A DNA stretch of 64,000 bases from Euprymna scolopes (Eukaryota), in NCBI GenBank assembly GCA_053919585.1, contig CM132819.1, one strand, 5' to 3'. This document shows positions 1,195-63,360 of the stretch, piece by piece. The position numbers and the translations under genes are program-made. Under the pieces are notes generated by a model. That model was not told where the DNA came from. It saw only the letters and a program-made list of their open reading frames with translations, and ran no database searches. Each line of letters opens with the position of its first letter. Position 1 is the first letter of the stretch.

Positions 1195-4100
1195 CTGGGT
1201 GATTGTGAGGTTAAAGAAAGAGAAAGGTGCAGTGCATAGAGAGACAAGTGCAAAACGATTTTTAAAAATAGGAGAAAAGGTGAGAAAAGAAAACTCGAAA
1301 AAGTTTTCCTTAAGAAATCATGACATTTTATAGAAAGATAAGCGCAAAAAAATGCAAAACATTACGAAAAAAAAAAAAAAGATTTTATAAAAGAATAATT
1401 AAATTTTATAAAAAGAATAAACGGTTTTATATAGAGAGGATTCATTAAAAAAATGATTTATCAGATTTTAATGATTGAATTTATATATTTTTTAAAATAT
1501 TCTTTTAAATTAGTAAGTTGAATTTAATTTCATTAGCCTCTATGTGCTTGCACATAATTAAATTATTGTGTAATTTATACATTTTCATGGGGGTGATACC
1601 AAACAAGTTGGAATGAATAATTAATAAATTCATGGAGATTTCAACATATTGTGAATTATTAATTCACCTTTATCTTATTTAATTTTAAAATGTACAATTT
1701 TCATTGGTTGATTTACAACCAATCAACTTACGACAATCTTGTTCATCCGAAGCATCAGAACAATCAAATGTTTTGTCACATTTCTTGTTAGCATTGATGC
1801 ATTGTCCGTTTTTACATTTGAATTGGTTGGCTTGGCAACGTTGTGATGTCGCTAAATGAGTGAGAGGTGAGAGAAAGCGAAAGGTGCAGTGCATAGGAAA
1901 ACAAGTGCAAATAATGTGATATCAATCAAGAAAATATTAAAATAAGAATCTACGAAACATTAATCAAAGAGTTCGATCATATTATCAAAAATAACTAAGT
2001 TTTAGACCTATTTCAAAACATGAAAATCAATGAATAGTTCGAGTTAATTCAACCTGACAAAATAGATGCATCAACCTCTTATATACTACTTAGGCATATG
2101 CCGAAAGGTTAATTAATTTGCATATTTGTTTTAAAAAATTATTTAAATTAACTATTGTATGTTATTGTATTTAATTCAATGTTTTTATTCCACGACTATT
2201 TATCTGAGAGTCCATCTTTCAAACTCCTTGGCCTAACGTTCACAGGAAACATGAGTTGGAACAATTACATTGAAGGCATTGCCAGGGCCGCCGCAAGAAA
2301 GGTAGGCTCTCTCTACCGTGCTAAAAAACTACTAACACCCGAAAGTATCCTGTACCTCTATAAGGCCACCATTCGCCCATGTATGGAGTATTGCTGCCAC
2401 ATCTGGGCTGGTGCATCTGCTACTAGTCTCTTGCTCCTTGACAAGGTTCAAAAGAGAGTCGCAAACCTGATAGGCCCTGAACTGGCATCTAAGCTTCAGC
2501 CTCTGTCCCATCGACGAAATGTTGCATCCCTCTGCCTTTTCTACAAGTATTTTAGTGGTGAATGCTCTGACGAACTGCAATCACTTGTGCCCCCACGACG
2601 TGAGCACCCTCGACAAACCCGACAGGCTACTAGATCCCACCCCCACACTGTAGAGGTCCCTAGATGTAAAAGATCTTTTTACTCCAATAGTTTCTTCCCC
2701 AGAACCGCAAGACTCTGGAATTCCATTCCAGGTCCCTGCTTCCCCAACAGTACTGACATGCAGAAGTTCAAGTGTAACGTGAACCGACACCTTGCTGCCC
2801 AAATCCGTACATAGTACCCCAGTAGTTGTTGCCCCTGATAGTAGCCCCCTACACCAAAGTGGCAATTTGCCTTGTTTGGGGTGAAAATGTAATTAAAAAA
2901 AAAAAAATAAAAAATATAATAAATCATACTGTTTCACAATAGTGTTTTTTTTCTAAGATAAATATGTAGCATTATTTTCTATTTGTGTCGATATGGTACT
3001 TCCTTTATGTAATTTTCATAATGTTTAATGTCCAATCAACTTACAACAATCTTGTTCATCTGAAGCATCAGAACAGTCAAATGTTTGATCACATTTCTTG
3101 TTAGCATCGATACAGTGTCCGTTTTTACATTTGAATTGGTTGGGTAGGCAACGTTGTGCAGTTGCTAAGAGTAAGAGGTGAAAGAAAGAGAAAGGTGCAG
3201 AGCATCGAAAGTGCAAATACGAGAAAGAGAAGAAAAATATTTTCCTGAAGAAATATTTTATGAATTCAGAAAAAATAAAACATAAGTCATATTGAAATAA
3301 GTATTTATCTGTTCAACTGAATTAGAATTATTGATTAAAATATGACCTTAAAATACTAATGTCAGAAATTAACATTAATTTTCAGTAATGAAATATACCA
3401 AATACATTTTAATATCCTTTCGAAATTATCTTTTTATCATATCTATCATTTTCTATTGAGAATCTTATAACCAATAATTAAATGGACATTTTATTTTAAA
3501 TGATAACATTGCGATGTGACAGAGTGAAAGGCAAAAAAAAGAAAAAAGGTGTAGTGTTTAAACACTACAATGCAAAAAAATGCAATATAAATAAAAAAAG
3601 AAAAGGCTTTCTTAAAAAAAATGAGATATTTAAGCAAAGGTTCGTGAAATTCATAAGCATTGAAATTATGAATGATAAATATGATTATCTTGAATATTTT
3701 AACTCTGTAATAACTTCCAAATATTTGCAACAAGTTTCACCACCCATATCAACTGGTGTATGGTTGAATATAATAGCGCACATTAACTTGCACAGGTTTA
3801 TTTTATGATAATTTATATTTCAGTTTAATAAAAAGGTAGAAACGAAAATGGAGGTTTCTGCTTGTGTAATTTTTTTTTAACTAGAAGGGTCACGAATTAT
3901 TAAGGCCAAACTTACAACAATCTTGTTCATCTGAAGCATCTGAGCAATCAAATGTTTTGTCGCATTTCTTGTTAGCATCGATGCATTGTCCGTTTTTACA
4001 TTCAAATTGGTTGGGTTGGCAACGTTGTGCAGTGGCTAAGAGTAGGAGGTGAAAGAAAGAAAGTTGCAGTGCATAGAAAAACAAGTGCAAAGAAAACGAA

Positions 4101-7100
4101 AAATGGAAGAAAAAAAGCTTTTCAGAAATATTTTATAGAAAGATGAACGCAAAGAAAAAATGTGAAGGTAGAAGAGGTTTTAAAACGGAAGAATTAAATT
4201 TTATAAAAAAAAAGAATTACGATTATTGCTAAGAATTTAAATTTAATTATTAATAGTGTTTTAACTGTTTTTCTAAAATTACAATTATATCCTAACTACT
4301 GAATTCAAATAATTATATGCAAGAGAAAATACTTTTGGTTTAAAAAATCACGTCTGTATAAATTTTTTTCTTTTTTTTTTTTTTACTTTTGAAAAAGTTA
4401 TTTAGATTCTTGTTTTAAAGTTTATCAATCTTAAATTGTGTAAATTAATGCAATTTCGATATTTGCTAATCAACTTACAACAATCTTGTTCATCTGAAGC
4501 ATCAGAACAATCAAATGTTTGATCACATTTCTTGTTAGCATCGATGCATTGTCCGTTTTTACATTTGAATTGGTTGGGTTGGCAAAGTTGTGATGTGGCT
4601 GAGAAAAGGAGGTGGAAGAAAGAGAAAGGTGCAGTGCAAAGGAAAGTGAAATAGAAACAGAAAAAAATGGCAAGACAGAAGAAAATGAGAATTTTAAAAA
4701 AGGATTCATGAGATTTCTTGATTCACACTAAATTCATATTTTAGTACATTATTAAGATTTATTTAGGCATATATTATTTCCATAGAACAGGCATCCGATT
4801 TCAATCTGTATGAATGTCTTAAGAAAACCGTCTACTTCTTAAGATATAAAATTTACAAGATTAAAATTAAATGTAAAAGATGCTTCTTTGCAATAATCCT
4901 GCCGTTACAAAATGCTTGTTGGTACTTAAGCAGAATAAGGATTTTTCTATTGTTAGACTTTTTCGGGCAGTTTATGTAAAAATGCCGAAACACCGGGTCA
5001 ATAAAATCGCAGCAGCAAACGTCGTTTAAAACATTTGTCATCAACAAAAATAATCATTAAAAAAAAATCATACAAAATTTTTGTGTTTGCTATCAGTTGA
5101 TTTTATTTTAAAAAAAAAAAAAAAGTGAAAAATAATGAACCTTACCTTACAAGGAGTGTTTTTCTCTTGATTTGATATATAGTTTTCTTAGTTTTCTAAA
5201 AATTGTCCAATAAAACTTGTATAAAATTGTATATTTTTCATAACAAAAAGAAGTTGTTCTTAATTTAATTAATTTTTTTTATTGAATTATCTTCATAACA
5301 AAGAAAATGTTTTTCTATATAAAAAAATTGATCAGTGTTTGTGTGAGAAAAAAAAAAAAAAGATCACAAAATTTCGGTCGACATCTTCCAGCATTTTACA
5401 TAAATGCCCGGAAAATTCCGATGGTAGTATGGTCCTTATTCTGCATAAGTACCAGATTGTTTTATTTTCTAAATAATTCGACTTTTGGTGTAACTACTTC
5501 AACAGAGTCGTAAACCCTTAGAATCGAAATCTGTTTCAATAACATCATCATCATGAGCATAAACAAACAAGTAATTTTCAGTATTTTACTTCTGAATGTT
5601 ACTAGTGTTGGGACGATTAATCGGAATTGGAAATATTGTAACTTGTTAAGGTATTAAAATCAGTATTAGAAACGGAAATGTTTGTATGGATTTTCCGATA
5701 CCAAAAAAAAAAAAATATTTTAATTTTATTTTGCTTGTTTTTGTTTAAAACTATCTTCCATTACTAATAAATATTTATGGATTTTAAAACTAAAATTTAT
5801 AAATCATCTCCCACAATGTATTTTTATTTTATATTTGCGAAAATATATGCACATATTAAATGTTTTGAAAATAATCTGGAAAAAAAAAATCAACAACTCA
5901 AACTAAATATTTAGCGATTTTAAAAGAATTGGAATCAGGATTAGTAAAAATATTGGAATTGTCACATCACTACTTACTACATAATAGCACTATGAGAGTC
6001 GCCATGTTGTAAGCTGTATTATAACTACGGCAACAGAAAATGTTTAGTGTATAAGGTTTATGTGCACAAATACTTGAAAGCCCCAAAATATAAATGTGAG
6101 CGATGTGTGCTGCCATGTCAACATATAATTTCAGTATGTAATTAGACGAATGTTTGTCTGAGTACAGTTTGATAAAACTTATGTTCATTAACAAAGATTG
6201 AAATAAAGACCTATAGCTACAAAAAACTGATGTTTAAAAGTCGTTATTGTTATTTTGACCAACATTCTTTACATGAATTTGATCTTAGTAAATGTCTAAA
6301 ATATAAAGTTTAAGCTTAAGGAGCTTAAAGAAGAAATTGAAATTCAGGAAATCTTACTTAGTGTCTAATAACTATAAACCAAATTTAATGCAAATGTGAA
6401 ATATTTGAATTTTGAAATAAGTTGCACCTATATTATTTCCTCTAAAACCTCTTTGAACTACTCTAAACTAACTGAAATTTGAAGAATATTTATTGATTGA
6501 GATAAATGGCAACTAGGGGTGACTCCAACCCCACTCCATCAATCTCTGAAATTGGGACTCTTCTTAGCAAAATGTAAACTAAAGCTAATTGTTTATTAAA
6601 AATGCTTTGATATTAAAAAAAATAAACTTATGATTGGAGTATCTACATAAAAAAAAAAACAAATTCAGAAAATGAGATTTTTTTATATTAAAAACCTCCA
6701 AAACTAGTTTGTGCTTTTCTTTAATTACTTACTACAATTGGATTTATCTGGCCCATCGGAACAAGCATCTGAATCATCACATTTGTAGATAGCATTTACA
6801 CATTGTCCGTTTTTACATTCAAATTGGTTTTTACATTCAGATTGGCAATGTAATGCAGAGCCACCCCCTCCCCCAGTATAATTCTAATTAAAATATAACT
6901 CATTTGTTACATGACAATAACTAGATTTAATTACTTACTACAGTTGGATTCATCTGACCCATCGGAACAATCAACATAGTCATCACATTTGTAGCTAGCA
7001 TCTATGCATTGTCCGTTTTTACATTCAAATTGGTGAGCTGGGCAACGTTGTGAAGTAGCTGAGCAAGAGAGGTTAAATACAGAAAAATGTTAGGTGCAGT

Positions 7101-10100
7101 GCAAAAGGGAGATAAGTGAGCCGAAAAAATGTATACACAAAGAAAAGCAATGATTTTTTTTATTTACATTTGAGTATATATTTATTTTCATTAAATACGG
7201 TTATGTTTATTGAATCAAAATATCTTAAATATTTCACACATCTCTAACTACTATCAATGCTATCATATTGGAGGAGTGTGCTCACATGATAGATATAGCA
7301 TTTCCTTAACACATGACAATTGAAATATATCCAAAAAGCCACTGTATTTTTTTTTTAGACTTATTACATCATTTTGCCGGCTTTTCTCTATTAATGATTC
7401 CCTTATTTTAGTTCTTTAATCTTCACATTCCACAAGCGATTTTTCTGACAAAAAGTGAATTGCTGACCCATTGGAACAATCAACATAATCACATTTGTAG
7501 ACAGTATTTTTACATTGTTGGTTTTTACACTCAAATTGGTGAGCTGAGTAAATTGATATAGAGGCTGAAAGGTACACAAATGTTAGGTGCAGTGCAAAAT
7601 GGAGACAAGCATAGTAAAAAGAGAACGGATTTCAAGAAAGGGAGTGAAAAATATATAAATTACTTTTCTTTATGCAACCTGCATCTACCCGACGTTACCC
7701 AGGAATCATTTTACTGTTATGTTTGTTTCACTTATTGAATTTTCTCACATATTTTTGCCCTTTATCCAAACTGATTTCTTATGAGAAATATTTACATTTT
7801 TTAAAATATAATTAAACAATGGAATATTTTTATATAATAGTAGAGACTGAGATAATCTAAGGTTGCATCTATTTCGTGCACTAACATCAAAGTCAAGAAG
7901 GCATGCTTATAATAATAATAATAATTGCTATTTCACCCCAAATAAGGCACAGTGCCACTTAGATGTAAAGGGCTACTATTCGAGACATAATTTACAGGGA
8001 GTTGAGCAACAAGATATCTGTTCACATTACACTTGAACTTCTGCATGTCAGCACAGTAAGGGAAGCAGGAACCTGGGAGTGAATTTCAAAGTCTAGAAGT
8101 CCGAGAAAAGAAATAAGAGTAAAAGGCTTTCCAACATCTAGGGATCTCTACTGTGTAGGAGTGCGATTTTGCTGGTTGTTTGTCAGGGGTATTTACATTA
8201 AGGGCTTGGAGTTCGTCAGAACATCATCTATTTAAAATAATGCTAAAATAAGCACAAGCATGCAACATTTCATCGATGGGACAGGGGTTGGAGTTTGGTT
8301 GACAGAGCGGTACCTAGCTAATGATTCTTTGTCGAACCCTATCTTGGAAAAAGAGAGGCTAGTAGCAAATGCATCAGCTCACCTGTGGCAATAATACTCT
8401 CTACATGTTTTAAGTTAATTGAACATTGAACTTTACACAATACGCGACAACTTGTTTATATAATACTTATGCATATGCAATATCAGTCGTAAGGTTAATT
8501 AATACCCAATCAACTTACGACAATCTTGTTCATCTGAAGCATCAGAACAATCAAATGTTTTGTCACATTTCTTGTTAGCATCGATACATTGTCCATTTTT
8601 ACATCTGAAATGGTTTGGTTGACAACGTTGTGCAGTGGCTGAGTGAGTGAGAGGTGAAAGAAAGGTGCAGTGCATAGGAAGACGAGTGCAAATAATGTTA
8701 TATGAATTCAGTAAATGGTGAGAAGAATGAGAATTAAAGAATTGTTATTAAAGTCACTTTATTAAAGCATTAATTGTTAATAAAGTCACTAGATTTTTAT
8801 CAAAATAATTGAAAATAGTATGTCAAAGAACATTTTTTTGGTTTTGAGAAAGCAATTCTATATTTTGCAGCACTAAAAAATAGTTGACATTATGTTTGTA
8901 TCAATTAGAAATTGCATCTATTTATGCAGTAATCATTTACTACAATCTTGTTCATCTGATGCATCATAACAATCAAATATTCCGTCACATTTCTTGGTAG
9001 CATCGATGCATTGTCTTTTATATGTAGTATAAAGAAAACGGGATATGGTAGCTTATAAAAACTGTAAGCGTATTTAATATAGCAAAGACAAATTGAGATT
9101 ATAGCAGTCAGGTGCGTAAGTTATAACTTTTCTATATTTGTCAAAAGCAGAAATAAAACCTGGCTGAAGAATGAGTTCAGGTTTTGTTGAATGACGTAAG
9201 ACTGAGCACTGACCTAACAGATACTCTACAAAACAGCCATATTGGTTTCCAATTATGGACTTTAGAGTTTGATTAAAAAAATGTTTAAATGGAGTCCATA
9301 AGAAATCTAATCAACTTACGACAATCTTGTTCATCTGAAGCATCAGAACAATCAAATGTTTGGTCACATTTCTTGCTAATATCGATGCATTGTCCGTTTT
9401 TACATTCGAATTGGTTGGGTTGGCAACGTTGTGGTGTTGCTGAGTGAGTGAGAGGTGAAAGAAAGAAAGGTGCAGTGCATTGGAAAAAAAAGGAGTAAAA
9501 AAAAAAAAGACAAAAGCTTCCCTAAAGAAATGAGATTTTTAAGAAAACATGAAATTTATTGATTATCATTAAAGCTATTGATGATAAATATGATTGTCTT
9601 GAATATTTTAACTCTTTAATAACTGAAATATTTGCAACAGGTTTCATATCACATTTTGACAGATGTAGGCACAAACATAATAGAGCATATTCTTGCCTAG
9701 TTGGATTTTTGCAGATTTTTAATTTTACTTGTGTTAGATCCCACATAATAATCATGCATTATATTTCTGAAGAAATTGTACACGCCTTTACATTTTTTAA
9801 TCATTATATATATATATATATATATATATATAGCTGTACTAACAATTATTATTTAGATTTATTATTAAAAATTGTGTCGATTTATGTAATATATTTTCTC
9901 ATCAACTTACAACAATCTTGTTCATCTGATCCATCAGAGCAATCAAATGTTTTGTCACATTTTTTGCTAGCATCAATGCATTGTCCGTTTTTGCATTCAA
10001 ATTGGTTGGGTTGGCAACGTTGTGCAGTGGCTGGGTGAGTGAGAGGTAGAAAGAAAGAAAGAAAGGTGCAGTGCATAGGAAGACAAATTCAAAGAAAAAA

Positions 10101-16100: not shown

Positions 16101-16333
16101 AAATTTATTGATTTAAATTAAATCTATTAATAATGAATATATGGTTATCTTTAACAGTCTAACTCTTTAATAACTGCCAAATATTTGCAAAATCTCGCAT
16201 TCTGACAGACATAAGCACAAAAATAATGGGGCATATTATTCTTGCGATTTTTAATTTTACTTGTGTTTGATCCCAGTAATAATTAATCATGCATCATATT
16301 TTTGAAGAACGCATTTAAATTAAAAACAAAAAA

Positions 16334-16402
<69 letters not shown>

Positions 16403-17199
16403 CGCGCTGTACGAAAAAAATTTATTTAGATTTATTTAGTTATTGGAAATTGTGTCGATTTATGTAATAATCATATTTTCTAATTGACTTACAACAATCT
16501 TGTTCATCTGAAGCATCAGAACAATCAAATGTTTTGTCACATTTCTTGCTAGCATCGATGCATTGTCCGTTTTTACATTCAAACTGGTTAGGTCGGCAAC
16601 GTTGTGATGTGGCTGAGTGAGTGAGAGGTGAAAGAAAGGTGCAGTGCATAAGACGAGTGCAAAGAAAAGATTGTACAAAAAGAAGTTACTATAAGAAAGG
16701 ATTTATTAAGAATTAAAGCATCAATAACAATTTAAATTCAAGATTTTTTTTTCGTTAAAATTGTAATAGAAATATCTAATTAGAATATTTTGAATTTTAA
16801 ATGAAAATGAATTTGCATTAATTTTATTTCATGATTTCTGGGGGATTATGAAAATTAACCATCATAATTATGGAAAGATTTTTTTTTTTTTAATATTTAC
16901 GATTAAAATCAAAAAATAACACAGAAAAATGTCCACACATCAGTAAAACTCATCAGTGCAGTTGGACATACACCTTTCCGCAGTCGTGGATCCAACCTAT
17001 AACCATGTTAACAGTCGGCAGCCCTTAGCATCGGACTACGAATAAGTGCCTGTAAAGATTTCTTAAGTGTCTATTAAATTAAGACTTGCCGGTCGCACAA
17101 TGCTAAGACCATGAGTTTGTTTGCAAACAAACTTAATAGTTGGCTTTGTTTAGTTGCTTAAATATGCGTCGGATGAAACTATATTTACGAAGTGCTCAG

Positions 17200-56800: not shown

Positions 56801-59800
56801 TTCACCTAAGTCTCATCTGCTGAATGTACACAGATTAGTAACTGTTACCATACAAAAATCACTAAACATATTCCCAAGTATATATTTTTTAAATTATAGT
56901 TAGATATGATATCTATATAAAAATATATTGCACATGGTCAGCAATATTATATGAAATAAGATAAACCAAAAGAGCGTTAGTGTATCTCATTTATTCTGCC
57001 AGAAAATTTTGAAACTTTTTGTGAAATATTGGAGTTCCAGAAAACGCTGGTTATAATTTTAACAGATGTACCATTTAAAAATAGCAAATGGCAGACTGCT
57101 AATATCTGTTTCTTTTGTAAAAAAAAAAAATAATTCTAGCGGGTCAATTATTAAAAATTCTATAAATTACAGAAAATGATCTAATGGATCATTTTCTGTA
57201 ATTTATAGAATTTTTACTAATTTCGACATGACATGTAAGTACGTAATGTTTTTATCTAATATGCACTTTCTGAAATCCTATTATTATGCACACGTAATGT
57301 AAATGTAAAAGATAATGTCTTCATTATCAAATATTTTATCCTCATATTCATAGTTGTTCTTTCACCACGTTACGACTGATTCATTCTATGGCTTTCTTCA
57401 TGCATATAACCACCTGAAAAGGCCAGAGGAGGAGTTGGCCGAAATGTGGTGAAGCAACCACAACTATGAAAATTAGGATAACAGTTCGGGGGAAAAAATG
57501 AATACACAAAGTCTTTGTTATTAAACTGATGAAACAAATCAGAAAATATGTACAAAAGAATTCAGAAGCTTAAACTAGATTTTCCATAGGATATATTTTT
57601 GGATTACTTAGTAATTAATAGAAGAACTTAAACCACATCTCCCATAGCACGATATATTTTTGGATTACTTAATAGAGCATGCTCTTCATAAAATATATCA
57701 ATGGATTTTATTTAGCATGCTACTTACGACATTCTAACTCATCTGAAGCATCAGAACAATCAAATGTTTCATCACATTTCTTGCTTCCCTCGATACATTG
57801 TCCATTCTTACATTCGAACTGGTTAGGTTGGCAACGTTGTGAAATGGCTGCTTGAAGGGTGAAAGAAATGAAAGGTGCAGTGCATAGAAAGACAAGTGCA
57901 AAAAAATGGAATGAAAATCGAAAATGCTGTGAGAAAAAAAAAAAACAAAAAAACGATGAAATTTTGTCTATTCACCCACTCAATAAGTTGGTAAAAATTT
58001 ATTCTATAACTAAATTTCATTAACATGTAATTTACTAATGCGAAAAGATTTTTTCTCCAATTTTTGGAACAAACATTCGTGAAGCCCATCAGAATAGTTA
58101 AACAAAACTTAAAATGTTTAAATAATTAAACACGATTTAATTCAAACAAATCAAAAATCAAATAATGGATCTATTTAAATTTTCTTTTGAAAAAAGATAA
58201 TTGTTTAATGTGACATTTTATGTACTCAATATTTGGATTTCATTTTTGTTGCTACTTACTACAATCTTGTTCGTCTGATCCATCTGAACAATCAAATGTT
58301 TGGTCACATTTCTTGTTAGCATCGATGCATTGCCCGTTTTTACATTCAAACTGGTTGGGTTGGCAATGTGCAGTGGCTGAGAGTGAAAGAGTGAAAGAAG
58401 GAAAGAAGGAATGGTGCAGTGCATAGGAAGATCAGTGTAAAGAGTGTGACATAAGAAAATGGTGAGAAAATGAGATTTATTGATAAGAATTAAATTGGTT
58501 ATATTTTATGGTTTGTTACATCTAGTCAAGAAAAGTGAAAAAATGAATTATATAACCAGATTTTATGAATTTGAAATTCGTCTGAAAAGATATGCTCGAC
58601 ACATATTGATGAATAATAATAAAAAAAAAAGGATCTTGTCCAGAATTCCCCAGGATTAAAAGAAAAATCTGTTTGATGTACATAATCGTAACGAAACCAA
58701 AATATATTTTAAAAATCATGTAAATTGATCAAGTAGTTTAAATAATTTTTTAAGCGATTAGGAATTCATAAGCATTACAGCGGAAGTCTATTAATTATAA
58801 ATTATTGTTGAGTTATCTCCCTTTGATTTAATAATTTTTTTTTTTTTTTAAATGGTGATACTCATAAAAATTGATTTTCTTATTAAAAAAAACTACTTCA
58901 TCGATTTGTGTGATTTTTGGAGTATATTTTCGTTTCAGCACAGATACACACATACACATTTTTTTTAATATAGGGGAATTCAGGACAAGAACTGAAAATA
59001 AATTTAAAATTAGAAGTTAGAATTAAAACTGTAGCAAAATTCCAAAATAGAGGGTTAATTTTGGGACACCATTTATTATTACTTCATGATTTTTATTTTA
59101 TTATTGCTACTACTTACGACAAAACAGTTCATCTGTAGAATCGGAACAGTCGAATCGGTGGTCACATTTCTTGCTAGCGTCAATACATTGTCCATTATCA
59201 CATTCAAACTGGTTGGGTTGGCAACGTTGTGCAGCGGCTGAGAGTGTGAGGGGGGAAAGAAATGAAGAGTGCAGTGCATAGAAGACAAGTGAAAAGAAAA
59301 CATGAAATGAATTAAGAAAATGGAAAGAAAATGAGATTTTATGAAATGAGATCTATTGATGAGAATTAAAGTTTGTATTGTTTGGATTATTTGGATTATT
59401 TAGACTACTGTTCTAATTCTTGAGTTATTTTTACAACTTTTCAGATGATGTAACCTTCGACCTTTAGGCATATCTTGTTGAGCTCTTGAATCTTTCTGTA
59501 ACAGTGCGTATGGGCGCGTGTGAGAACATAGCAGCACCTGTTAAAGCACGAATGCAAATTAGCAAGTGTGCACAAGCTTGCACCACAAGAAAAGGAGAAA
59601 AAATACACCATTTGGTCAACAGGAGAAGCAAGTTGCGTGCTGAGGAAAATGGACATGTGAATACGAGGGTGAAAAAGTGCTGGATAACACCAACATCAGG
59701 TGGCTGGGGGGACAAAGACTTAAAAAGCAAGTGTGTGCAAAAAGACTTTTGTAAGATAATGAAATGCCTTGTTTTGGAAGAACCACAAATGAATGTTCAT

Positions 59801-61148
59801 TTGCACTTTAAAAAATGTCGAGTCTGATTTTTCTTTATTTTTTTTTTCCTTTGCAACAAAGTATTAAACAATGTGTGGGTTCGAAATGTAACGACACTGT
59901 TCAAGTATCACGGCTATGTTACATTTTAATCAAATTCAGAAATCGGGATAGAATTTCGATTACAACCCTTTATTTAATTCATATGGGTAGCATGCTCTTG
60001 TTCTGTCAGCCATGGCCAGGTAAATGTCTTAATTCTTAATATCACCTGTGCTGAGGATTGAACCTTCAATCTTCAGAAGAGTGCCACTTACAACTGAATT
60101 TTACCATATTTCTGAAGTAGTAAGATTCCTTAACTCAAAGTGAGAACAGTAGTCCGAATAATCCAAATACAAATTGTCAATCCTCATCTAAAAAATTCAG
60201 AAACGAGAAATATTAATATTTATGAAAGCCCCTTTCCAAATGAAAATTAATTGAGTCAAAATAATTGAATTTGAATAATCGCAGAACATTTTAAGTTTAA
60301 GAAATGAAATTTTTGATTTTGCAACGCTAAAAAAATAATTGACACTATTATAACTTTTGGTTTATTTAGTCATCAGAAATGATGCCCATTTATGTAATAA
60401 TCATATTCGCTAATCAACTTACAACAATCTTGTTCATCTGAACCGTCAGAACAATCAAATGTTTGGTCACATTTTTTGCTAGCCTTGATACATTGTCCGT
60501 TTTTACATTCAAATTGGTTGGGTTGACAACGTTGTGATGTGGCTGAGTGAGTGAGAGGTGAAAGAAAGAGAAAGGTGCAGTGCATAATAAAAAAAGTAAA
60601 AAAGAAAAAAGCTTACCTAAAGTAATGAGATTTTAAAAAATATTTAGAAAATTTATTGATAGGAATTAGTTATTAATGATCTTGAACGTTCTAATTCTGT
60701 ACTAACTCAAATATTTGCAACAAGTTTCATCTCATATTTCGACTGGTGTATTATTTTTGTCTCCTTGACTTTTGTTTAACACCCACATAATTAATCATGC
60801 ATCATATTTGAAGCCGCACGAGTCGTTAAACTTTAAAAATCTTTCTATAAGATATAGATGTACAAATAACATTAACCCCATTTGATGTTTGGTATGTATA
60901 TGGCTTCATCACCAATCATTATATCTTCAATATTGGATTCATCATTATTATCAGGTTTAATTAGACATATAAAAATGAAAAAATGCAATTAAAAAAAGTA
61001 GTTGTACACATGTACCGGCGTTGCCCGGGATAGAATATAAAGGGATAATTTGAATATAAAAATGAAATTTAATTTTCTGAAAAAAAAAATTGTTATTTAT
61101 TTCAATTCTAATTAAAAAATAATTTGATATTATTTGAAAATTAAGGTG

Positions 61149-61189
<41 letters not shown>

Positions 61190-63215
61190 TAATAATTAAC
61201 ATTTTCAAATGTAAAAAAAGAAACTTTATAATATATTTCAATTCTTTTTAAGATAGTTTAATTTATATAAGTTGTTACAGGAAAAACCCGAAAACAAAAA
61301 AATGTTCAAAATAAAACGGTATATAATTGTTGTCCTACTGGTTGAAATGCGAGAAAAAACTAATTGCAAAAATTGGTAGCCATAACAAAGTTAAAATATT
61401 CAAAATAACCAATTATGTTTTTAAATATGAATTAATTTTTATTTAATAAAGTATATTATAATTGACTAAGAAAAAAATTTAGTTATGAATAATTGTTTAA
61501 TTTAAAATACTGAAGAATTAGTTTGAATTTCTTATCAAATTTAATGTATTATTAAATTATGCTAATCTACTTACTACAATTGGCTTCGTCTGAAGCATCA
61601 GAACAATCAAATGTTTGATCACATTTCTTGCTAGCATCGATACATTGTCCGTTTTTACATCTGAATTGGTTAGGTTGACAACGTTTTCCAGTGGCTGAGT
61701 TGAAGGGGTGAAATAAACGAAAGGTGTAGTACATAAGAAAGGTGCAGTGCAAAGAGAGATAAGTGCAAAGAGATCGGATATAGTTATTTTAATTAAAATA
61801 GTATAGTATCAATTTATAATTTATTGCTTTCACAGGATTTAATTTCTCAACAATTTTACTTTTTTATAGTCAATCATTTTTTTTTTTTATTAGATTAATG
61901 TAGTTTAATAAATTTTATATAGATGTATATTACATAGCAATTTAATCATGTAATATTTTATAGTAGGATAGTAGTTTGCTTGAAGCATTGTTTAGTGTGT
62001 ATACAAAAGTAATTTATGGAAAAGCAAAAAACAATGCGAAGGTGTAACGGATAAGCACAAACTGAGAAAAGACATTTAACAGTGGAAGGAGTTTTATAGT
62101 TTCCATGTTTTTACTAATACAATATATTTTTTTATATAACAGTTTTTTATATTACAATCTTGCATCGGTGTTTGATCGAAGTTTCCGTATAACATAATAT
62201 TTCAGGAATAAATTTTCCTTCTTCAGATGTGTTCAAGGATTGATATTCATTTGATTTGTTGACTGCTACAAGTGACAATATACACATTCAAACAGAAACC
62301 AACGCAGCGATCTGATGCTGTGATGTGTAAACTGTCAAATCACTTGAACATCATTTTTAAAGTTAACTTTAGTTCAAACTAGCATTTCGGCCCGGCATTG
62401 CCCGGGTGTTTGGAGGTGTATGCTGAGCAAAAAAAAAAGAGGTAATTTTTTAAACTTTGACCCCTATTATGTCCTTAACATTTATTGTTTTGCTTTGGGC
62501 TCAAATAAAGTTATTAAGTTAGATCCATGCCCAAGGAACCAATATCTAAAATGTCAAGTGTTTAGACCCCAAATTATCGGAGGAGTTTGGTAGAGCTCAC
62601 AAAGGTCAAATCGTTAACCTTTTACTCCTTAACAGCGAAATTTCTGGCCGAAACCCAATCACATCGATTTTTCCAAATCTCAGTACCCTGTATATCAAAT
62701 TTCGAGTCTGTAGACTAAAAATTGACAGAGTTATTGCATAGGGAAATGCACACAAACACAGACACGTTCACTTTTATAGATATATAGATAAAGTGAAAAT
62801 TGATAATAAATATGTTGTCCAAAATATTTCCACATTAGATAGAAATCCTTTGTGAATAAACATTATGCTGACATTTAATTAATTTGTCTCAGCTTAAAAT
62901 TTTTTTTTTTTTTAAGTTTTAAGCTTTGTATATCTCATGTTCTCCAAATGATGTCATTTAGATTTGGTTTATGTCAACAAAAACGGTATTTTTTAAATGA
63001 AACAAAATTCATATTTGTGACATTGAAATGACTGAAATACAACAATAATCGTCATTAAAATAAGACATGCATTTCTGAGGCCACTGATTACTTACTACAG
63101 TTGGCTTCATCTGACCCATCGGAACAATCAACGTAATCATCGCATTTGTAGATAGCATTTATACATTGTCCGTTTTTACATTCAAATTGGTTATCTCGGC
63201 AACGTGATGGAGAAG
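1075..63215 (-). CDS. Partial multi-exon gene: uninterrupted array of >=41 LDLa (LDL receptor class A) modules, one per exon; no start, stop or other domain in window
   Basis: Repeated ~120-nt units bounded by YAG acceptors and GTAAGT donors on the minus strand, translating to C-x6-C-x4-C-I-x5-C-D-x3-D-C-x-D-x-S-D-E-x2-C (LDLa signature); all phase 1-1. Confidence 0.93.
1732..1851 (-). CDS. LDLa exon (120 nt)
   Basis: TAG..GTAAGT; [39 protein letters not shown]. Confidence 0.9.
2200..2915 (+). mobile_element. 5'-truncated CR1/L2-like LINE (C-terminal ORF2, 3'UTR, A-rich tail), intronic, antisense to host gene
   Basis: Open frame to 2814: [68 protein letters not shown], typical post-RT region; GC-richer than flanks; A-rich tail ~2895-2920. 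Confidence 0.88.
3045..3164 (-). CDS. LDLa exon (120 nt)
   Basis: TAG..GTAAGT; [39 protein letters not shown]. Confidence 0.9.
3502..3575 (-). pseudogene. Relic of a deleted LDLa exon (decayed acceptor region and first codons only)
   Basis: taacattgcgatgtgacagagtga...aaggtgtagtgt aligns by eye to the consensus caacgttgtgatgtggctgagtga...aaggtgcagtgca; the following intron resembles 9520-9660. Confidence 0.6.
3916..4035 (-). CDS. LDLa exon (120 nt)
   Basis: TAG..GTAAGT; [39 protein letters not shown]. Confidence 0.9.
4479..4598 (-). CDS. LDLa exon (120 nt)
   Basis: CAG..GTAAGT; [39 protein letters not shown]. Confidence 0.9.
6733..6862 (-). pseudogene. Decayed Y-type LDLa pseudo-exon
   Basis: [39 protein letters not shown]: internal duplication, SDE motif lost; donor intact but acceptor and pyrimidine tract absent. 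Confidence 0.75.
6939..7058 (-). CDS. LDLa exon, Y-type (120 nt)
   Basis: CAG..GTAAGT; [39 protein letters not shown]. Confidence 0.9.
7460..7564 (-). pseudogene. Decayed Y-type LDLa pseudo-exon
   Basis: [29 protein letters not shown]: Cys1 lost, 3' end and donor missing; acceptor CAG and upstream TGCACTGCAC retained. Confidence 0.75.
7930..8410 (-). mobile_element. Degenerate copy of the CR1/L2-like LINE 3' end
   Basis: Reverse complement matches 2385-2890 (e.g. gacatgcagaagttcaagtgtaa, gagtattattgccac). Confidence 0.8.
8519..8638 (-). CDS. LDLa exon (120 nt)
   Basis: CAG..GTAAGT; [39 protein letters not shown]. Confidence 0.9.
8941..9015 (-). pseudogene. 5'-truncated LDLa pseudo-exon
   Basis: Only [24 protein letters not shown] remains; donor GTAAAT; first third of the exon and the normal acceptor deleted. 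Confidence 0.75.
9320..9439 (-). CDS. LDLa exon (120 nt)
   Basis: CAG..GTAAGT; [39 protein letters not shown]. Confidence 0.9.
9911..10030 (-). CDS. LDLa exon, B-type (120 nt)
   Basis: CAG..GTAAGT; [39 protein letters not shown]. Confidence 0.9.
10300..10655. mobile_element. Old MITE-like inverted-repeat element, duplicated with the repeat unit
   Basis: atgaaaagactttt..atttacgattaaaagcaaaa versus ttttgcttttaatcttgcatatt..aaaagtcttctcttcat; homologues near 16870-17480, 24020-24170, 29770-31200, 38660 and 49430. Confidence 0.55.
11137..11256 (-). CDS. LDLa exon, A-type (120 nt)
   Basis: CAG..GTAAGT; [39 protein letters not shown]. Confidence 0.9.
11257..11316 (-). promoter_or_regulatory. Representative CAC/GCAC-rich intronic element upstream of the 3' splice site (present before most exons)
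   Basis: Sense strand UUGCACUUGUCUUUCUAUGCACUGCACCUUUCUUUUUCUUUCACCUCUCACUCACCCAG; UGCACUGCAC lies ~25-45 nt before the AG in 30 of 41 exons; regulatory role is inferred. Confidence 0.6.
12110..12229 (-). CDS. LDLa exon, Y-type (120 nt)
   Basis: CAG..GTAAGT; [39 protein letters not shown]. Confidence 0.9.
12738..12881. other. Assembly gap (144 N)
   Basis: Run of n. Confidence 1.
13189..13750 (-). mobile_element. CR1/L2-like LINE 3' fragment inserted only in the lowest-coordinate repeat unit
   Basis: Poly-T then reverse complement of the LINE 3'UTR/ORF ([23 protein letters not shown]; PESILYLY-like); homologous sites at ~20980, 27565, 35560 and 45240 are empty. Confidence 0.82.
15428..15550 (-). 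CDS. LDLa exon, T-type (123 nt)
   Basis: CAG..GTAAGT; [40 protein letters not shown]. Confidence 0.9.
15885..16004 (-). CDS. LDLa exon, B-type (120 nt); upstream GCAC element absent
   Basis: CAG..GTAAGT; [39 protein letters not shown]. Confidence 0.88.
16337..16402. repeat. (TA)n(GA)n microsatellite; other (TA)n tracts at ~548, 9806, 17202, 29890, 30627, 47762 and 61152
   Basis: Read directly from the sequence. Confidence 0.95.
16493..16612 (-). CDS. LDLa exon, B-type (120 nt)
   Basis: CAG..GTAAGT; [39 protein letters not shown]. Confidence 0.9.
17961..18080 (-). CDS. LDLa exon, A-type (120 nt)
   Basis: CAG..GTAAGT; [39 protein letters not shown]. Confidence 0.9.
20061..20180 (-). CDS. 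LDLa exon, Y-type (120 nt)
   Basis: CAG..GTAAGT; [39 protein letters not shown]. Confidence 0.9.
22572..22694 (-). CDS. LDLa exon, T-type (123 nt)
   Basis: CAG..GTAAGT; [40 protein letters not shown]. Confidence 0.9.
23060..23179 (-). pseudogene. Full-length LDLa pseudo-exon with both splice sites mutated
   Basis: Acceptor CAG>CAC, donor GTAAGT>GCAAGC, extra Cys ([16 protein letters not shown]), upstream element eroded. Confidence 0.82.
23643..23762 (-). CDS. LDLa exon, B-type (120 nt)
   Basis: CAG..GTAAGT; [39 protein letters not shown]. Confidence 0.9.
24617..24736 (-). CDS. LDLa exon, A-type (120 nt)
   Basis: CAG..GTAAGT; [39 protein letters not shown]. Confidence 0.9.
26911..27030 (-). 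CDS. LDLa exon, Y-type (120 nt)
   Basis: CAG..GTAAGT; [39 protein letters not shown]. Confidence 0.9.
28560..28790 (-). mobile_element. Degenerate RTE-like LINE C-terminal fragment, present in each repeat unit (also ~14640, 21840, 36480, 46060)
   Basis: [41 protein letters not shown] resembles the RTE C-terminal RRLRWFGHV.RM.E..W.K motif. Confidence 0.6.
29344..29466 (-). CDS. LDLa exon, chimeric B/T-type (123 nt)
   Basis: CAG..GTAAGT; [40 protein letters not shown]. Confidence 0.9.
29947..30627. mobile_element. Penelope-like relic with ~150-bp inverted repeats, embedded in (TA)n
   Basis: ~29962-30120 inverted against ~30470-30627; interior reads [16 protein letters not shown], like a GIY-YIG endonuclease C-terminus. 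Confidence 0.6.
31663..31782 (-). CDS. LDLa exon, A-type (120 nt)
   Basis: CAG..GTAAGT; [39 protein letters not shown]. Confidence 0.9.
33692..34180. mobile_element. Unit-specific ~490-bp insertion with an internal ~160-bp direct repeat; family unassigned
   Basis: Interrupts ttcttatgaaaa..aagtgtatttg, which is contiguous in other units (~11670, 19630, 26480). Confidence 0.65.
34600..34719 (-). CDS. LDLa exon, Y-type (120 nt)
   Basis: CAG..GTAAGT; [39 protein letters not shown]. Confidence 0.9.
37248..37370 (-). CDS. LDLa exon, T-type (123 nt)
   Basis: CAG..GTAAGT; [40 protein letters not shown]. Confidence 0.9.
37710..37829 (-). CDS. LDLa exon, chimeric T/B-type (120 nt)
   Basis: CAG..GTAAGT; [39 protein letters not shown]. 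Confidence 0.9.
38241..38360 (-). CDS. LDLa exon, B-type (120 nt)
   Basis: CAG..GTAAGT; [39 protein letters not shown]. Confidence 0.9.
39632..39816. repeat. ~65-bp inverted repeat with ~50-bp spacer
   Basis: tttacaaatgaatggacgtaagaatcagacgaaaacaaaatccaattgatcagtactaaaacgcct versus its near reverse complement at 39750-39816. Confidence 0.85.
40490..40609 (-). CDS. LDLa exon, A-type (120 nt)
   Basis: CAG..GTAAGT; [39 protein letters not shown]. Confidence 0.9.
40744..40927. mobile_element. 184-bp MITE with ~28-bp TIRs and 8-bp TSD (Merlin-like GG termini)
   Basis: TIR ggtgctaatgcagagagtgatccg / cggatcactctctgcatgagtacc; TSD ttagaacg / ttagaaag; empty site ctaaattagaaagaaacat at ~18225 and ~31905. 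Confidence 0.85.
42277..43844 (-). mobile_element. Non-autonomous Helitron-like element with tandemly reiterated ~680-bp 3' segment
   Basis: Minus strand reads A|TCTATATA...CTAG|T; ~42277-42960 repeated at ~42960-43630, third CTAG end at ~43630; absent from other units. Confidence 0.7.
44237..44356 (-). CDS. LDLa exon, Y-type (120 nt)
   Basis: CAG..GTAAGT; [39 protein letters not shown]. Confidence 0.9.
46825..46947 (-). CDS. LDLa exon, T-type (123 nt)
   Basis: CAG..GTAAGT; [40 protein letters not shown]. Confidence 0.9.
47314..47433 (-). CDS. LDLa exon (120 nt)
   Basis: CAG..GTAAGT; [39 protein letters not shown]. Confidence 0.9.
48561..48680 (-). CDS. LDLa exon (120 nt)
   Basis: TAG..GTAAGT; [39 protein letters not shown]. 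Confidence 0.88.
49054..49173 (-). CDS. LDLa exon (120 nt)
   Basis: CAG..GTAAGT; [39 protein letters not shown]. Confidence 0.9.
49821..49940 (-). CDS. LDLa exon (120 nt)
   Basis: CAG..GTAAGT; [39 protein letters not shown]. Confidence 0.9.
50150..50560 (-). mobile_element. Highly degenerate CR1/L2-like LINE 3' fragment
   Basis: Scattered similarity to the 2200-2915 element (tattgttgccatatct, aagctgcagccc, gtagaaatctccaga). Confidence 0.5.
50760..51196 (+). mobile_element. Helitron-like non-autonomous relic related to 42277-43844, opposite orientation
   Basis: gcctgcctgcctactaccacttttt..aaacacc..ggcacccagg is the reverse complement of ~42280-42360. Confidence 0.5.
51270..51872 (+). mobile_element. 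Degenerate CR1/L2-like LINE 3' fragment
   Basis: aaaggtaggctccct..gagtattgttgccacatctggg..[16 protein letters not shown]..catgcagaaatttaagt..gtggcaatataccttgtttgggatgaa match 2298-2885. Confidence 0.75.
53400..53515. repeat. Short dispersed repeat, inverted copy of ~100-205
   Basis: accacttatcacggcctagaggctactcaaggataagg versus ccttatcctcgagtggcctcttggccttgataagtggt. Confidence 0.65.
53675..53794 (-). CDS. LDLa exon, Y-type (120 nt), identical to 6939-7058
   Basis: CAG..GTAAGT; [39 protein letters not shown]. Confidence 0.9.
55134..55244 (-). CDS. LDLa exon with 9-nt in-frame deletion (111 nt); possibly decaying
   Basis: CAG..GTCAGT; [36 protein letters not shown]. Confidence 0.55.
55432..55890. 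mobile_element. Nested inverted-repeat element (Penelope-like or foldback relic); relative at ~59390-60170
   Basis: Outer actactgttctaattcttga / tcaagataagaacagtagt; inner atttaatccacaggggtagcatgctc / gagcatgctacccctgtggattaaat. Confidence 0.6.
57146..57222. repeat. Perfect 30-bp-stem palindrome with 5-nt loop
   Basis: taaaaattctataaattacagaaaatgatc-taatg-gatcattttctgtaatttatagaattttta. Confidence 0.9.
57728..57847 (-). CDS. LDLa exon (120 nt)
   Basis: CAG..GTAAGT; [39 protein letters not shown]. Confidence 0.9.
58260..58376 (-). CDS. LDLa exon (117 nt; linker one codon shorter)
   Basis: CAG..GTAAGT; [38 protein letters not shown]. Confidence 0.88.
59118..59237 (-). CDS. LDLa exon (120 nt), divergent
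   Basis: CAG..GTAAGT; [39 protein letters not shown]. Confidence 0.9.
60423..60542 (-). CDS. LDLa exon (120 nt)
   Basis: CAG..GTAAGT; [39 protein letters not shown]. Confidence 0.9.
61575..61694 (-). CDS. LDLa exon (120 nt)
   Basis: CAG..GTAAGT; [39 protein letters not shown]. Confidence 0.9.
62379..62788 (-). mobile_element. Non-autonomous Helitron-like element (410 bp)
   Basis: Minus strand A|TCTATATA...hairpin cccgggcaatgccggg...CTAG|T; shares gtatatcaaatttcgagtctgtagact block with ~43660-43844. Confidence 0.75.
63096..63215 (-). CDS. LDLa exon, Y-type (120 nt); first exon in transcription order within the window
   Basis: CAG..GTAAGT; [39 protein letters not shown]. Confidence 0.9.
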
Positions 63216-63360
63216 CTGGGTGCAAGAGGTGAAAAAAAAAATGAAAGGTGCAGTGCAAAGAGAGAAAAGAAAGATTCATATTGATTGGCAAAAAGAACCT
63301 ATACGATTTTCTTGCCAAGGATTAAAGATATTATAATTACGGACTACTAAATTAAAATTT

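What the first reader, a model, noticed from the sequence alone, without database searches (positions are those of the whole stretch)
1195..63260. Conserved UGCACUGCAC / tandem-CAC element before almost every acceptor: candidate MEC-8/Couch potato/RBPMS switch for the whole array
Seen: sense-strand consensus UUGCACUUGUC..UAUGCACUGCACCUUUC..UUUCACCUCUCACUCACYCAG|CCACUGCAC. The 10-mer is exact in 30 of 41 exons, including divergent ones (57728, 59118, 63096) whose introns are otherwise hard to align, and it is not a standard branch-point consensus. Known: MEC-8, Couch potato and RBPMS are dimeric RRM proteins that bind tandem CAC/GCAC; RBPMS bound near 3' splice sites tends to repress exons, and MEC-8 promotes exon skipping in C. 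elegans perlecan (unc-52). Inference: one trans factor could silence dozens of exons together, giving short versus giant isoforms. Alternatives are a Dscam-style selector pairing with a docking site outside the window, or plain inheritance by duplication.
Basis: partly seen in the sequence, partly recalled or inferred. Interest (0 to 1): 0.85.

Follow-up and report, generated by a model that had tools for sequence, protein, structure and literature searches.

The report
Conserved U2-matching motif before LDLa exons
A 10-letter intron motif (UGCACUGCAC) before almost every exon of a 40-exon repeat gene is real and kept by selection; it sits where the branch site should be and pairs perfectly with U2 snRNA, so it is more likely a core splicing signal than a proven master switch.

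Summary
Observation confirmed. The window is a minus-strand array of 40 intact LDL-receptor class A exons (117-123 nt, in frame) plus about 5 decayed copies, in a cephalopod-like genome. TGCACTGCAC occurs 31 times, always on the sense strand, ending 26-37 nt (once 47 nt) before the acceptor.

It is selected, not just inherited. It changes 1.7 times per column on the exon tree. The rest of the upstream block changes 6.0 times, distant intron 9.2 and codon positions 1+2 1.5. A marine-metagenome contig from another organism keeps it exactly while the rest of that intron cannot be aligned.

Interpretation partly supported. The motif fits RBPMS/MEC-8 taste (UGCAC, CAC-rich upstream flank). However, the two constrained GCACs are 1 nt apart, against an optimum above 6 nt, and polyA RNA-seq gave no coverage, so skipping is untested.

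A stronger lead is that ACUGCAC is the ideal U2 snRNA branch-site complement (ACUG[A]CAC) without the bulged adenosine:
- It lies just upstream of the pyrimidine tract.
- It is the best U2-pairing site in 37 of 40 units.
- Some variants keep U2 pairing while destroying GCAC.
- Units that lost it mostly carry a canonical branch site.

Best reading: a branch-region U2-pairing element (about 0.5). An array-wide RBPMS-type switch remains possible (about 0.2).

The parts
1075..63257 (-). Tandem array of one-exon-per-domain LDL-receptor class A cassette exons: 40 intact and about 5 decayed. It runs off both ends of the window. Eight 'YKCDDY' type exons spaced 5-9.6 kb apart mark a super-repeat.
63248..63257 (-). 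Exact motif; exon 63096-63215
61742..61751 (-). Exact motif (distal copy of a local duplication); exon 61575-61694
61724..61733 (-). Proximal duplicated copy TGTACTACAC. Both GCACs are destroyed, but it gives a 9-bp duplex with U2 GUGUAGUAU (-11.5 kcal/mol).
60575..60584 (-). Exact motif; exon 60423-60542
59269..59278 (-). Exact motif; exon 59118-59237
58414..58423 (-). Exact motif; exon 58260-58376 (117 nt)
57875..57884 (-). Exact motif; exon 57728-57847
55280..55289 (-). Exact motif followed by CTAAC. It precedes a variant LDLa unit (about 55130-55245) with a 9-nt deletion and a GTCAGT donor, probably a pseudo-exon.
53830..53839 (-). Exact motif directly followed by the canonical branch sequence CTAAC; exon 53675-53794
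49969..49978 (-). Motif decayed (GTGGATGTCT). The unit has TTAAC branch-like sites at -46 and -15; exon 49821-49940
49206..49215 (-). Exact motif; exon 49054-49173
48710..48719 (-). Exact motif; exon 48561-48680
47467..47476 (-). TACACTGCAC: the first GCAC is lost and the U2-pairing heptamer is intact, followed by CTAAC; exon 47314-47433
46980..46989 (-). Exact motif; exon 46825-46947
44392..44401 (-). TTCATTGCAC followed by TTAAC. The first GCAC is lost and the C>U change keeps U2 pairing through a G.U pair; exon 44237-44356
40642..40651 (-). Exact motif; exon 40490-40609
38391..38400 (-). TGCACTGCAA (last C>A); exon 38241-38360
37860..37869 (-). Exact motif; exon 37710-37829
37401..37410 (-). 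Exact motif; exon 37248-37370
34755..34764 (-). TTCATTGCAC + TTAAC; exon 34600-34719
31813..31822 (-). Exact motif; exon 31663-31782
29497..29506 (-). Exact motif; exon 29344-29466
27066..27075 (-). TTCGTTGCAC + TTAAC; the A>G change is compatible with a G.U wobble; exon 26911-27030
24769..24778 (-). Exact motif; exon 24617-24736
23789..23798 (-). Exact motif; exon 23643-23762
23058..23215 (-). Pseudo-exon unit. The acceptor AG and the donor GT are both lost, and the motif is reduced to a single TGCAC (tttgcacc) by a 5-nt deletion.
22725..22734 (-). Exact motif; exon 22572-22694
20216..20225 (-). TTCATTGCAC + TTAAC; exon 20061-20180
18111..18120 (-). Exact motif; exon 17961-18080
16639..16648 (-). 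Exact motif; exon 16493-16612
15885..16084 (-). Intact exon 15885-16004 whose upstream block has lost the motif altogether; a CTAAT branch-like site sits at -24
15581..15590 (-). Exact motif; exon 15428-15550
12265..12274 (-). TTCATTGCAC + TTAAC; exon 12110-12229
11289..11298 (-). Exact motif; exon 11137-11256
10066..10075 (-). Exact motif; exon 9911-10030
9470..9479 (-). Exact motif; exon 9320-9439
8665..8674 (-). Exact motif; exon 8519-8638
7587..7596 (-). Exact motif + CTAAC in front of a decayed LDLa pseudo-exon (7463-7560)
7094..7103 (-). Exact motif + CTAAC; exon 6939-7058. The 20-nt core TTTGCACTGCACCTAACATT is identical in marine-metagenome contig L002.
4629..4638 (-). Exact motif; exon 4479-4598
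4064..4073 (-). TGCACTGCAA; exon 3916-4035
3195..3204 (-). TGCTCTGCAC; exon 3045-3164
1884..1893 (-). Exact motif; exon 1732-1851
1227..1236 (-). Exact motif; exon 1075-1194
12738..12881 (.). Assembly gap inside an intron; it is not part of any unit

Best explanation
UGCACUGCAC is a selectively maintained, single-stranded RNA element at the branch-site position of each LDLa cassette exon. It ends 26-37 nt before the acceptor, is followed at once by a 15-16 nt pyrimidine tract, and no AG intervenes before the acceptor. Its 3' heptamer ACUGCAC forms seven contiguous pairs (one G.U) with the invariant U2 snRNA branch-recognition sequence GUGUAGU. The register is the same as for the ideal branch sequence ACUG[A]CAC, but there is no bulged adenosine. 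Each UGCAC alone also pairs with U2 GUGUA. I infer that the element works by engaging U2 snRNP at the 3' splice-site region. It could be a non-canonical branch site or a U2 landing site that supports weak nearby branch sites. It could also be a bulge-less competitor that tunes how well each exon is used. Shown here: conservation, position, U2 complementarity and the pattern of variants. Inferred: actual U2 binding, which nucleotide branches, and whether the effect is positive or negative.
For: Selection: the motif shows 1.7 changes per column, against 6.0 to 9.2 in surrounding intron, which equals codon positions 1+2. It is the best-kept upstream 10-mer. Position: it ends 26-37 nt from the exon (47 nt in one unit), and the nearest upstream AG is at least 61 nt away in 39 of 40 units. 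The only constrained adenosines upstream of the AG are the two inside the motif, with 3 and 1 changes; the downstream UUCAC and CUCAC adenosines show 6-10 changes. U2 pairing: RNAduplex against GUGUAGUAUCUG picks the motif position as the best site in 37 of 40 units. The median energy is -9.1 kcal/mol, against a mean of -5.4 for 2,000 other intron windows (5th percentile -9.0) and -4.5 for shuffles. The U2 sequence is as printed in PMC4315302 and PMC12342898. The ideal intron mimic in the latter paper is ...GAUACUG[A]CAC, and deleting its A gives ACUGCAC. Variants: the A-type units have CAUUGCACUU, where C>U keeps a wobble pair while the first GCAC is lost. The proximal copy at 61724-61733, UGUACUACAC, destroys both GCACs yet gives the strongest U2 duplex (-11.5 kcal/mol). 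Redundancy with canonical branch sites: a yURAy site within -50..-10 is present in 3 of 29 units with the exact motif and in 8 of 11 without it. In the other organism (L002), exon 3 has AAUACUAAGCA, a canonical bulged-A site, in the same part of the upstream block. Cross-organism footprint: in L002 exon 2 the 20-nt core is 100% identical, while the exon is 87-88% identical and the rest of the intron cannot be aligned. Intron-read-through ORFs of another assembly encode the motif in 8 of 15 units. No local secondary structure is predicted, so the site is accessible.
Against: The 10-mer has no yUnAy branch consensus and no bulged adenosine. Deleting the branch A weakens SF3B binding to a U2-intron duplex from nanomolar to near micromolar (PMC12342898). 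U2 pairing in the heptamer register explains 7 of the 10 constrained letters; the first UGC needs a second register or a protein. About 5% of random 57-nt intron windows pair with U2 as well as the motif does, because U2 is G/U-rich. Among the six single substitutions inside the heptamer, three keep pairing and three break it, which is no better than chance. In units such as 7058 and 53794, and in L002 exon 2, the motif and a canonical CUAAC are both conserved, so the motif is not simply a replacement for a branch site. The motif-versus-branch-site association is not corrected for shared ancestry; after collapsing clades, by hand count, it is roughly 4 of 7 against 2 of about 25. There are no lariat or transcript data.
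Confidence: 0.5

Rival explanations
1. The tandem UGCAC is a binding platform for an RBPMS/MEC-8/Couch potato family RRM protein. When that protein is expressed, it represses many or all of these 3' splice sites together, giving short versus giant isoforms.
For: Every GCAC in the upstream 80 nt is UGCAC, which is the preferred (A/U)GCAC site, and the G is constrained (PMC5311487). CAC density is 5.9 per 100 nt upstream, 0.5 downstream and 0.9 in other intron. CACN1-12CAC is present in 36 of 40 units. This matches the map for RBPMS-repressed exons, with enrichment within about 80 nt upstream and in the exon (PMC6613909). The site is unstructured. A protein on this site would also cover the U2-pairing heptamer, which gives a direct route to repression.
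Against: The two constrained GCACs are 1 nt apart. ITC shows that one dimer prefers more than 6 nt (8-12 nt is best), and the shortest spacer tested was 4 nt. The upstream GCAC at suitable spacing is unconstrained and accompanies only 16 of 29 exact motifs. Variants that destroy GCAC but keep U2 pairing persist in front of intact exons (A-type units). Loss of the motif goes with presence of a canonical branch site, which a pure silencer model does not predict. No skipping data exist. The presence and expression of an RBPMS orthologue were not tested.
Confidence: 0.2
2. A different sequence-specific protein reads the motif. One candidate is a Y-box protein on GCACC, a general intronic splicing silencer in human cells. 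Another is U1A/SNF on (U)UGCAC.
For: GCACC is present in 28 of 40 units. [quoted passage not shown] U1A recognises GCAC in the same conformation as MEC-8 does.
Against: The GCACC silencer was shown only near 5' splice sites and lost activity with distance from them. The C after the motif is less constrained, with 4 changes. The U1A heptamer AUUGCAC is not matched (UAUGCAC and CUUUGCAC instead; my reading of the consensus against the U1A site recalled from memory).
Confidence: 0.12
3. RNA-RNA pairing. Either the motif pairs Dscam-style with a docking site elsewhere, or copies in different introns pair with each other and loop out exons. The second option is possible because UGCACUGCA is nearly self-complementary.
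For: Two copies can form a 4+4 bp duplex of -9.4 kcal/mol. There are many copies in one transcript.
Against: No sense-strand complement occurs in the window beyond chance: only two hits on that strand, each with 3 mismatches. An 8-bp interrupted helix is weak. No consensus structure is predicted. All copies being identical is unlike Dscam selectors, which compete for one docking site.
Confidence: 0.06
4. There is no function. The motif is carried along by duplication and gene conversion of exon-proximal intron.
For: The array is built from recent super-repeat duplications. The whole -70..-1 block is shared between units. The decayed pseudo-exon at 7587 still has the exact motif.
Against: The motif columns change 3-5 times less than the columns on both sides, including those lying between the motif and the exon. 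A conversion gradient running outward from the exon cannot produce that pattern. The motif survives the deepest split of the tree. It is also identical in another organism whose surrounding intron cannot be aligned.
Confidence: 0.04

Closest known systems
U2-type branch-point sequence / 'B-box' (yUnAy; ideal form UACUG[A]CAC pairing with U2 GUGUAGUA)
   Same: The distance to the 3' splice site is the same, and the pyrimidine tract follows immediately. Pairing with U2 is 7 bp in the canonical register. Transitions that keep wobble pairing are tolerated, as described for human B-boxes (PMC4315302).
   Different: There is no bulged branch adenosine and no U at -2 from an A. Constraint extends over 10-13 nt, which is more than a normal metazoan branch site. 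The pentamer is repeated in tandem.
RBPMS / MEC-8 / Couch potato binding sites (tandem GCAC; Tpm1 exon 3 upstream CAC clusters; UGCAC repeats of the Xenopus localisation signal)
   Same: The UGCAC pentamer, the constrained G, the CAC cluster within 80 nt upstream of a cassette exon and the single-stranded context all match.
   Different: The constrained pair has a 1-nt spacer instead of more than 6 nt. No binding, expression or skipping evidence exists. Variants that lack GCAC are tolerated.
GCACC-type intronic splicing silencer (Gao et al. 2022, PMC8789036)
   Same: The same pentamer with an essential G, and copy-number dependence. That RNA pulled down SF3B1, a U2 snRNP protein.
   Different: The known element acts just downstream of 5' splice sites in human minigenes; here the motif lies upstream of 3' splice sites.
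Dscam exon-cluster selector/docking sequences
   Same: A conserved intronic element sits in front of each exon of a tandem exon array.
   Different: No docking complement was found. All copies are identical, and the exons are not known to be mutually exclusive.

Membership tests
U2-type branch site (B-box) | [quoted passage not shown] | tested here: met
   ACUGCAC pairs with GUGUAGU over 7 bp at -9.1 kcal/mol. It is the best site in 37 of 40 units and falls within about the top 5% of control intron windows.
U2-type branch site (B-box) | Bulged branch adenosine with U at -2 (yUnAy) | tested here: not met
   No yUnAy occurs within the 10-mer, and the duplex has no bulge.
U2-type branch site (B-box) | Lies about 18-40 nt upstream of the acceptor, followed by a pyrimidine tract, with no AG in between | tested here: met
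   The motif ends 26-37 nt from the exon (47 nt in one unit). CCTTTCTCTTTCTTTC follows it. The nearest upstream AG is at least 61 nt away in 39 of 40 units.
U2-type branch site (B-box) | Lariat forms at this site | not testable with these tools
   There was no transcript coverage in the runs laid on the window.
RBPMS/MEC-8/Cpo binding site | Two or more (A/U)GCAC motifs with a conserved G | tested here: met
   UGCACUGCAC is exact in 29 of 40 units; the G columns show 3 and 1 changes.
RBPMS/MEC-8/Cpo binding site | GCAC motifs separated by more than 6 nt (optimum 8-12 nt) so that one RRM dimer can bind both | tested here: not met
   The constrained pair has a 1-nt spacer. A third GCAC 6-20 nt upstream is present in 16 of 29 units and is unconstrained. 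The looser CACN1-12CAC definition is met in 36 of 40 units.
RBPMS/MEC-8/Cpo binding site | Positional signature of repressed exons: enriched upstream and in the exon, depleted downstream | tested here: met
   CAC per 100 nt is 5.9 upstream, 1.4 in the exon and 0.5 downstream, against 0.9 background.
RBPMS/MEC-8/Cpo binding site | Physical binding and factor-dependent exon skipping | not testable with these tools
   No CLIP or expression data are available. The polyA RNA-seq depth was about 0.
Dscam-type docking/selector system | A complementary docking site on the same transcript | tested here: not met
   The sense strand of the window has only two hits, each with 3 mismatches, which is within chance. 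The gene outside the window was not searched.
GCACC-type intronic silencer | GCACC pentamer close to the 5' splice site of the regulated exon | tested here: not met
   GCACC is present in 28 of 40 units but lies upstream of the 3' splice site. GCAC density in the 80 nt after donors is 0.06 per 100 nt.

The most novel reading that the evidence does not exclude
The motif is a dual-use site repeated before at least 40 exons. It is a perfect but adenosine-less U2 snRNA landing site, and it is also a UGCAC site for an RBPMS-family protein. Competition between U2 snRNP and that one protein at the branch position would then set, in a single step, how many LDLa modules the giant protein contains (short versus giant isoforms).
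Probability: 0.13. Interest if true: 0.8.

Novelty: new variant of a known kind. Interest (0 to 1): 0.45.

Why it matters
If the element is the U2-pairing site, these 40 introns are a natural set of strongly conserved branch regions with perfect U2 complementarity but no bulged adenosine. Structural work says that arrangement should bind SF3B poorly. It would therefore ask how such introns branch, or whether bulge-less U2 sites are used as built-in brakes. If a GCAC-binding protein competes there, the array would be a clear case of one factor controlling the length of a modular extracellular protein. Either way the finding gives a sharp experiment: a G>A change in ACUGCAC keeps U2 pairing but kills GCAC, which separates the two models. 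If lariat mapping simply shows ordinary branching at or next to the motif, the finding reduces to a well-conserved core splicing signal in a duplicated exon array.

Tried and rejected
RNA evidence: reads of two polyA RNA-seq runs and contigs of two further runs were laid on 57600-63300. Exon depth was about 0, no splice joints appeared, and the pile-ups were only on repeats and poly(A/T). The contigs cover intron and exon alike at low depth.

Orthologue search: phmmer of one exon against 1.84 billion representatives gave only generic LDLa-rich proteins, with at most 66-68% identity per repeat. The gene product appears to be unannotated.

A word-indexed search with intron-read-through ORFs found homologous arrays in ENA assembly ERZ21867824, but its DNA could not be fetched. 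Only the ORF translations could be used.

A scan of JGI metagenome contigs with a degenerate exon pattern gave 0 hits.

Rfam gave no family in the window. RNAalifold on -80..+15 of the 40 units gave no consensus structure. The docking-site search found nothing on the sense strand.

In-frame ATG: the ATG inside tATGCACTGCAC opens an ORF into the exon in some units. However, 2-, 4- and 6-nt indels shift the frame between units, so coding was rejected.

The upstream UUGCACUUGUC resembles part of miR-92-family miRNAs (from memory). There was no Rfam hit and those columns are unconstrained, so this was rejected as chance.

Earlier scan notes on this genome gave nothing for this place or motif.

Full report
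WHAT IS THERE

The whole window lies inside one minus-strand gene. A protein-pattern scan finds 41 LDL-receptor class A units, and Pfam confirms PF00057 with E about 1e-13. Forty units have an AG acceptor and a GTAAG donor and are 117, 120 or 123 nt long, so every exon keeps the reading frame. A nucleotide profile search adds about five decayed or partial units:
- 23058-23168 has lost both splice sites.
- 7463-7629 is decayed.
- About 55108-55311 has a 9-nt deletion and an odd donor.
- 6717-6859 and 8926-9015 are fragments.

Eight exons of a distinct 'YKCDDY' type recur every 5-9.6 kb, so the array grew by duplication of multi-exon super-repeats. Notes by other agents on this genome call it cephalopod or octopus-like. 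Consistent with that, runs labelled 'mollusc metagenome' hold this DNA.

The assembly gap at 12738-12881 is inside an intron, 509 nt from the nearest acceptor. Its flanks are ordinary intron. Nothing below depends on continuity across it.

CHECK OF THE OBSERVATION

TGCACTGCAC occurs 31 times, always on the sense strand, against 0.03 expected. It precedes 29 of the 40 intact exons, plus the units at 55280 and 7587. It ends 26-37 nt before the exon, and 47 nt in one unit.

I built a tree from exon and donor-flank columns only and counted parsimony changes per column:

| Columns | Changes per column |
|---|---|
| Motif | 1.7 |
| Rest of -69..-3 | 6.0 |
| -140..-70 | 9.2 |
| Donor +7..+30 | 7.65 |
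| Codon third positions | 3.2 |
| Codon positions 1+2 | 1.5 |

The motif is the minimum of all intronic 10-column windows, and the Mann-Whitney p value against the flank is about 6e-6.

Columns lying between the motif and the exon evolve faster than the motif itself. A gene-conversion gradient running outward from the exon therefore cannot explain the pattern.

An alignment-free count agrees. The motif is kept exactly in 29 of 40 units. The best-kept coding 10-mer is kept in 30 of 40, and the best downstream intronic 10-mer in 11 of 40. The motif also survives the deepest split of the unit tree.

OTHER ORGANISMS

No annotated orthologue exists among 1.84 billion representative proteins. ORFs that read from the intron into the exon found homologous arrays elsewhere.

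In ENA assembly ERZ21867824 the DNA could not be retrieved. Eight of the 15 ORFs that reach far enough upstream encode CTA[H/P], ALH or HCT at the expected place. These are the three reading frames of TGCACTGCAC.

A Tara Oceans contig, L002 (1,224 nt), carries three consecutive exons of such an array with introns of only about 370-420 nt:
- Its exon 2 is 87-88% identical to the window's A-type exons. Upstream it has TTTGCACTGCACCTAACATT, identical to the units at 7058 and 53794, while the rest of the intron cannot be aligned.
- An unbiased BLAST profile of L002 against the window peaks, within the introns, exactly on the motif.
- Its exon 3 unit (also L001) has lost the motif.

WHAT IT IS LIKELY TO DO

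Local RNA structure is not predicted. No complementary docking site lies on the sense strand in the window, and no Rfam family matches.

The RBPMS reading

Points in favour:
- All upstream GCACs are UGCAC.
- The flank is CAC-rich, at 5.9 per 100 nt against 0.9 background and 0.5 downstream.
- RBPMS-repressed exons show CAC pairs within about 80 nt upstream (PMC6613909).

Points against:
- One RRM dimer of MEC-8, Cpo or RBPMS prefers GCACs more than 6 nt apart, and 8-12 nt is best (PMC5311487). The constrained pair here is 1 nt apart, and the suitably spaced third GCAC is unconstrained.
- GCACC is also a general silencer in human cells, with YB1 and SF3B1 as bound proteins (PMC8789036). The reading protein is therefore not uniquely implied by the sequence.

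The U2 reading

Folding the 3' splice-site region against the U2 snRNA branch-recognition stretch picks the motif itself. ACUGCAC pairs over seven contiguous positions with GUGUAGU. The U2 sequence is GUGUAGUA as printed in PMC4315302 and GUGUAGUAUCUGUUCUU as printed in PMC12342898.

The ideal intron partner used for the SF3B structure is ...UACUG[A]CAC. The motif is that sequence with the bulged adenosine removed.

Several further observations fit this reading:
- The motif position is the best U2-pairing site in 37 of 40 units. The median energy is -9.1 kcal/mol, against -5.4 for other intron windows and -4.5 for shuffles.
- The site lies at branch-site distance, and the strongest pyrimidine tract follows it directly.
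- The only constrained adenosines before the AG are inside it.
- Some variants fit U2 pairing better than GCAC reading. The five A-type units have CAUUGCACUU or CGUUGCACUU: the first GCAC is gone and pairing is kept by wobble. The duplicated proximal copy at 61724-61733, UGUACUACAC, has lost both GCACs but gives the strongest U2 duplex.
- Units without the exact motif mostly carry a canonical yURAy branch sequence nearby (8 of 11), whereas units with it rarely do (3 of 29) (not corrected for shared ancestry).
- In L002 exon 3 a canonical bulged-A site, AAUACUAAGCA, lies in the same part of the upstream block.

Cautions on the U2 reading:
- About 5% of random intron windows pair with U2 equally well.
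- Single substitutions inside the heptamer split three pairing-preserving to three pairing-breaking.
- The first three letters of the motif are constrained but unexplained by the heptamer register.
- The motif and CUAAC are both conserved in some units.
- Removing the bulged A weakens SF3B binding strongly. A bulge-less site may therefore be a landing pad or a brake rather than the branch itself.

VERDICT

The best-supported mechanism is a branch-region U2-pairing element (about 0.5). It could also combine with the U2 reading, because a GCAC-binding protein would sit on the U2-pairing site itself.

Nothing is known about expression. Two polyA runs gave essentially no reads on six exons.

The element is best filed as an unusual variant of a known kind of signal. 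A G>A point mutant would separate the two main models.

Noticed in passing
window 23058-23215; 7463-7629; 6717-6859; 8926-9015; 55108-55311: These are decayed or partial LDLa units inside the array. One has lost both splice sites and one TGCAC copy, one is decayed yet keeps the exact motif, two are exon fragments without the upstream block, and one has a 9-nt in-frame deletion and a GTCAGT donor.
   Followed up: partly
window exons starting at 63215, 53794, 44356, 34719, 27030, 20180, 12229, 7058: A distinct exon type (…[10 protein letters not shown][VD]DC…) recurs every 5-9.6 kb and marks a super-repeat of 4-6 exons (2 between 12229 and 7058). The same two exon types occur in the other assembly (P0155, P0176) and in Tara contig L002, so the type split is older than those lineages.
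   Followed up: partly
window 61720-61755: A local tandem duplication of about 18 nt covers the motif block. The distal copy stays exact. The proximal copy has two transitions that destroy both GCACs and yield the strongest U2 duplex in the array (9 bp, -11.5 kcal/mol).
   Followed up: yes
window 62375-62947, 59892-60273, 58555-58745, 57791-57981: RNA-seq reads and contigs pile up here very deeply (word depth up to tens of thousands), but 92% of the laid reads run on into unlike sequence. These are interspersed repeats or poly(A/T) stretches inside introns, not expression of this gene.
   Followed up: no
window 58657-58673 and 58923-58933: Contigs of runs labelled RNA show clusters of T>C on the plus strand, which is A>G on the gene's sense strand. 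Run X3 has 23 T>C places against 12 A>G. This could be intronic A-to-I hyper-editing of unspliced transcripts or strain polymorphism. No matching DNA run was compared.
   Followed up: no
window 40482-40652 and equivalents: The ATG inside tATGCACTGCAC opens a reading frame that runs into the exon in some units ([20 protein letters not shown]…). Indels of 2-6 nt shift the frame between units, so it is not coding. These read-through ORFs are nevertheless what prokaryote-style gene callers record, and they made the cross-assembly comparison possible.
   Followed up: yes
L002 1-1224: A Tara Oceans marine-metagenome contig carries three consecutive exons of a homologous LDLa array with introns of only about 370-420 nt, against 0.4-4 kb in the window. 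An unidentified pelagic relative therefore has a much more compact version of the gene.
   Followed up: partly
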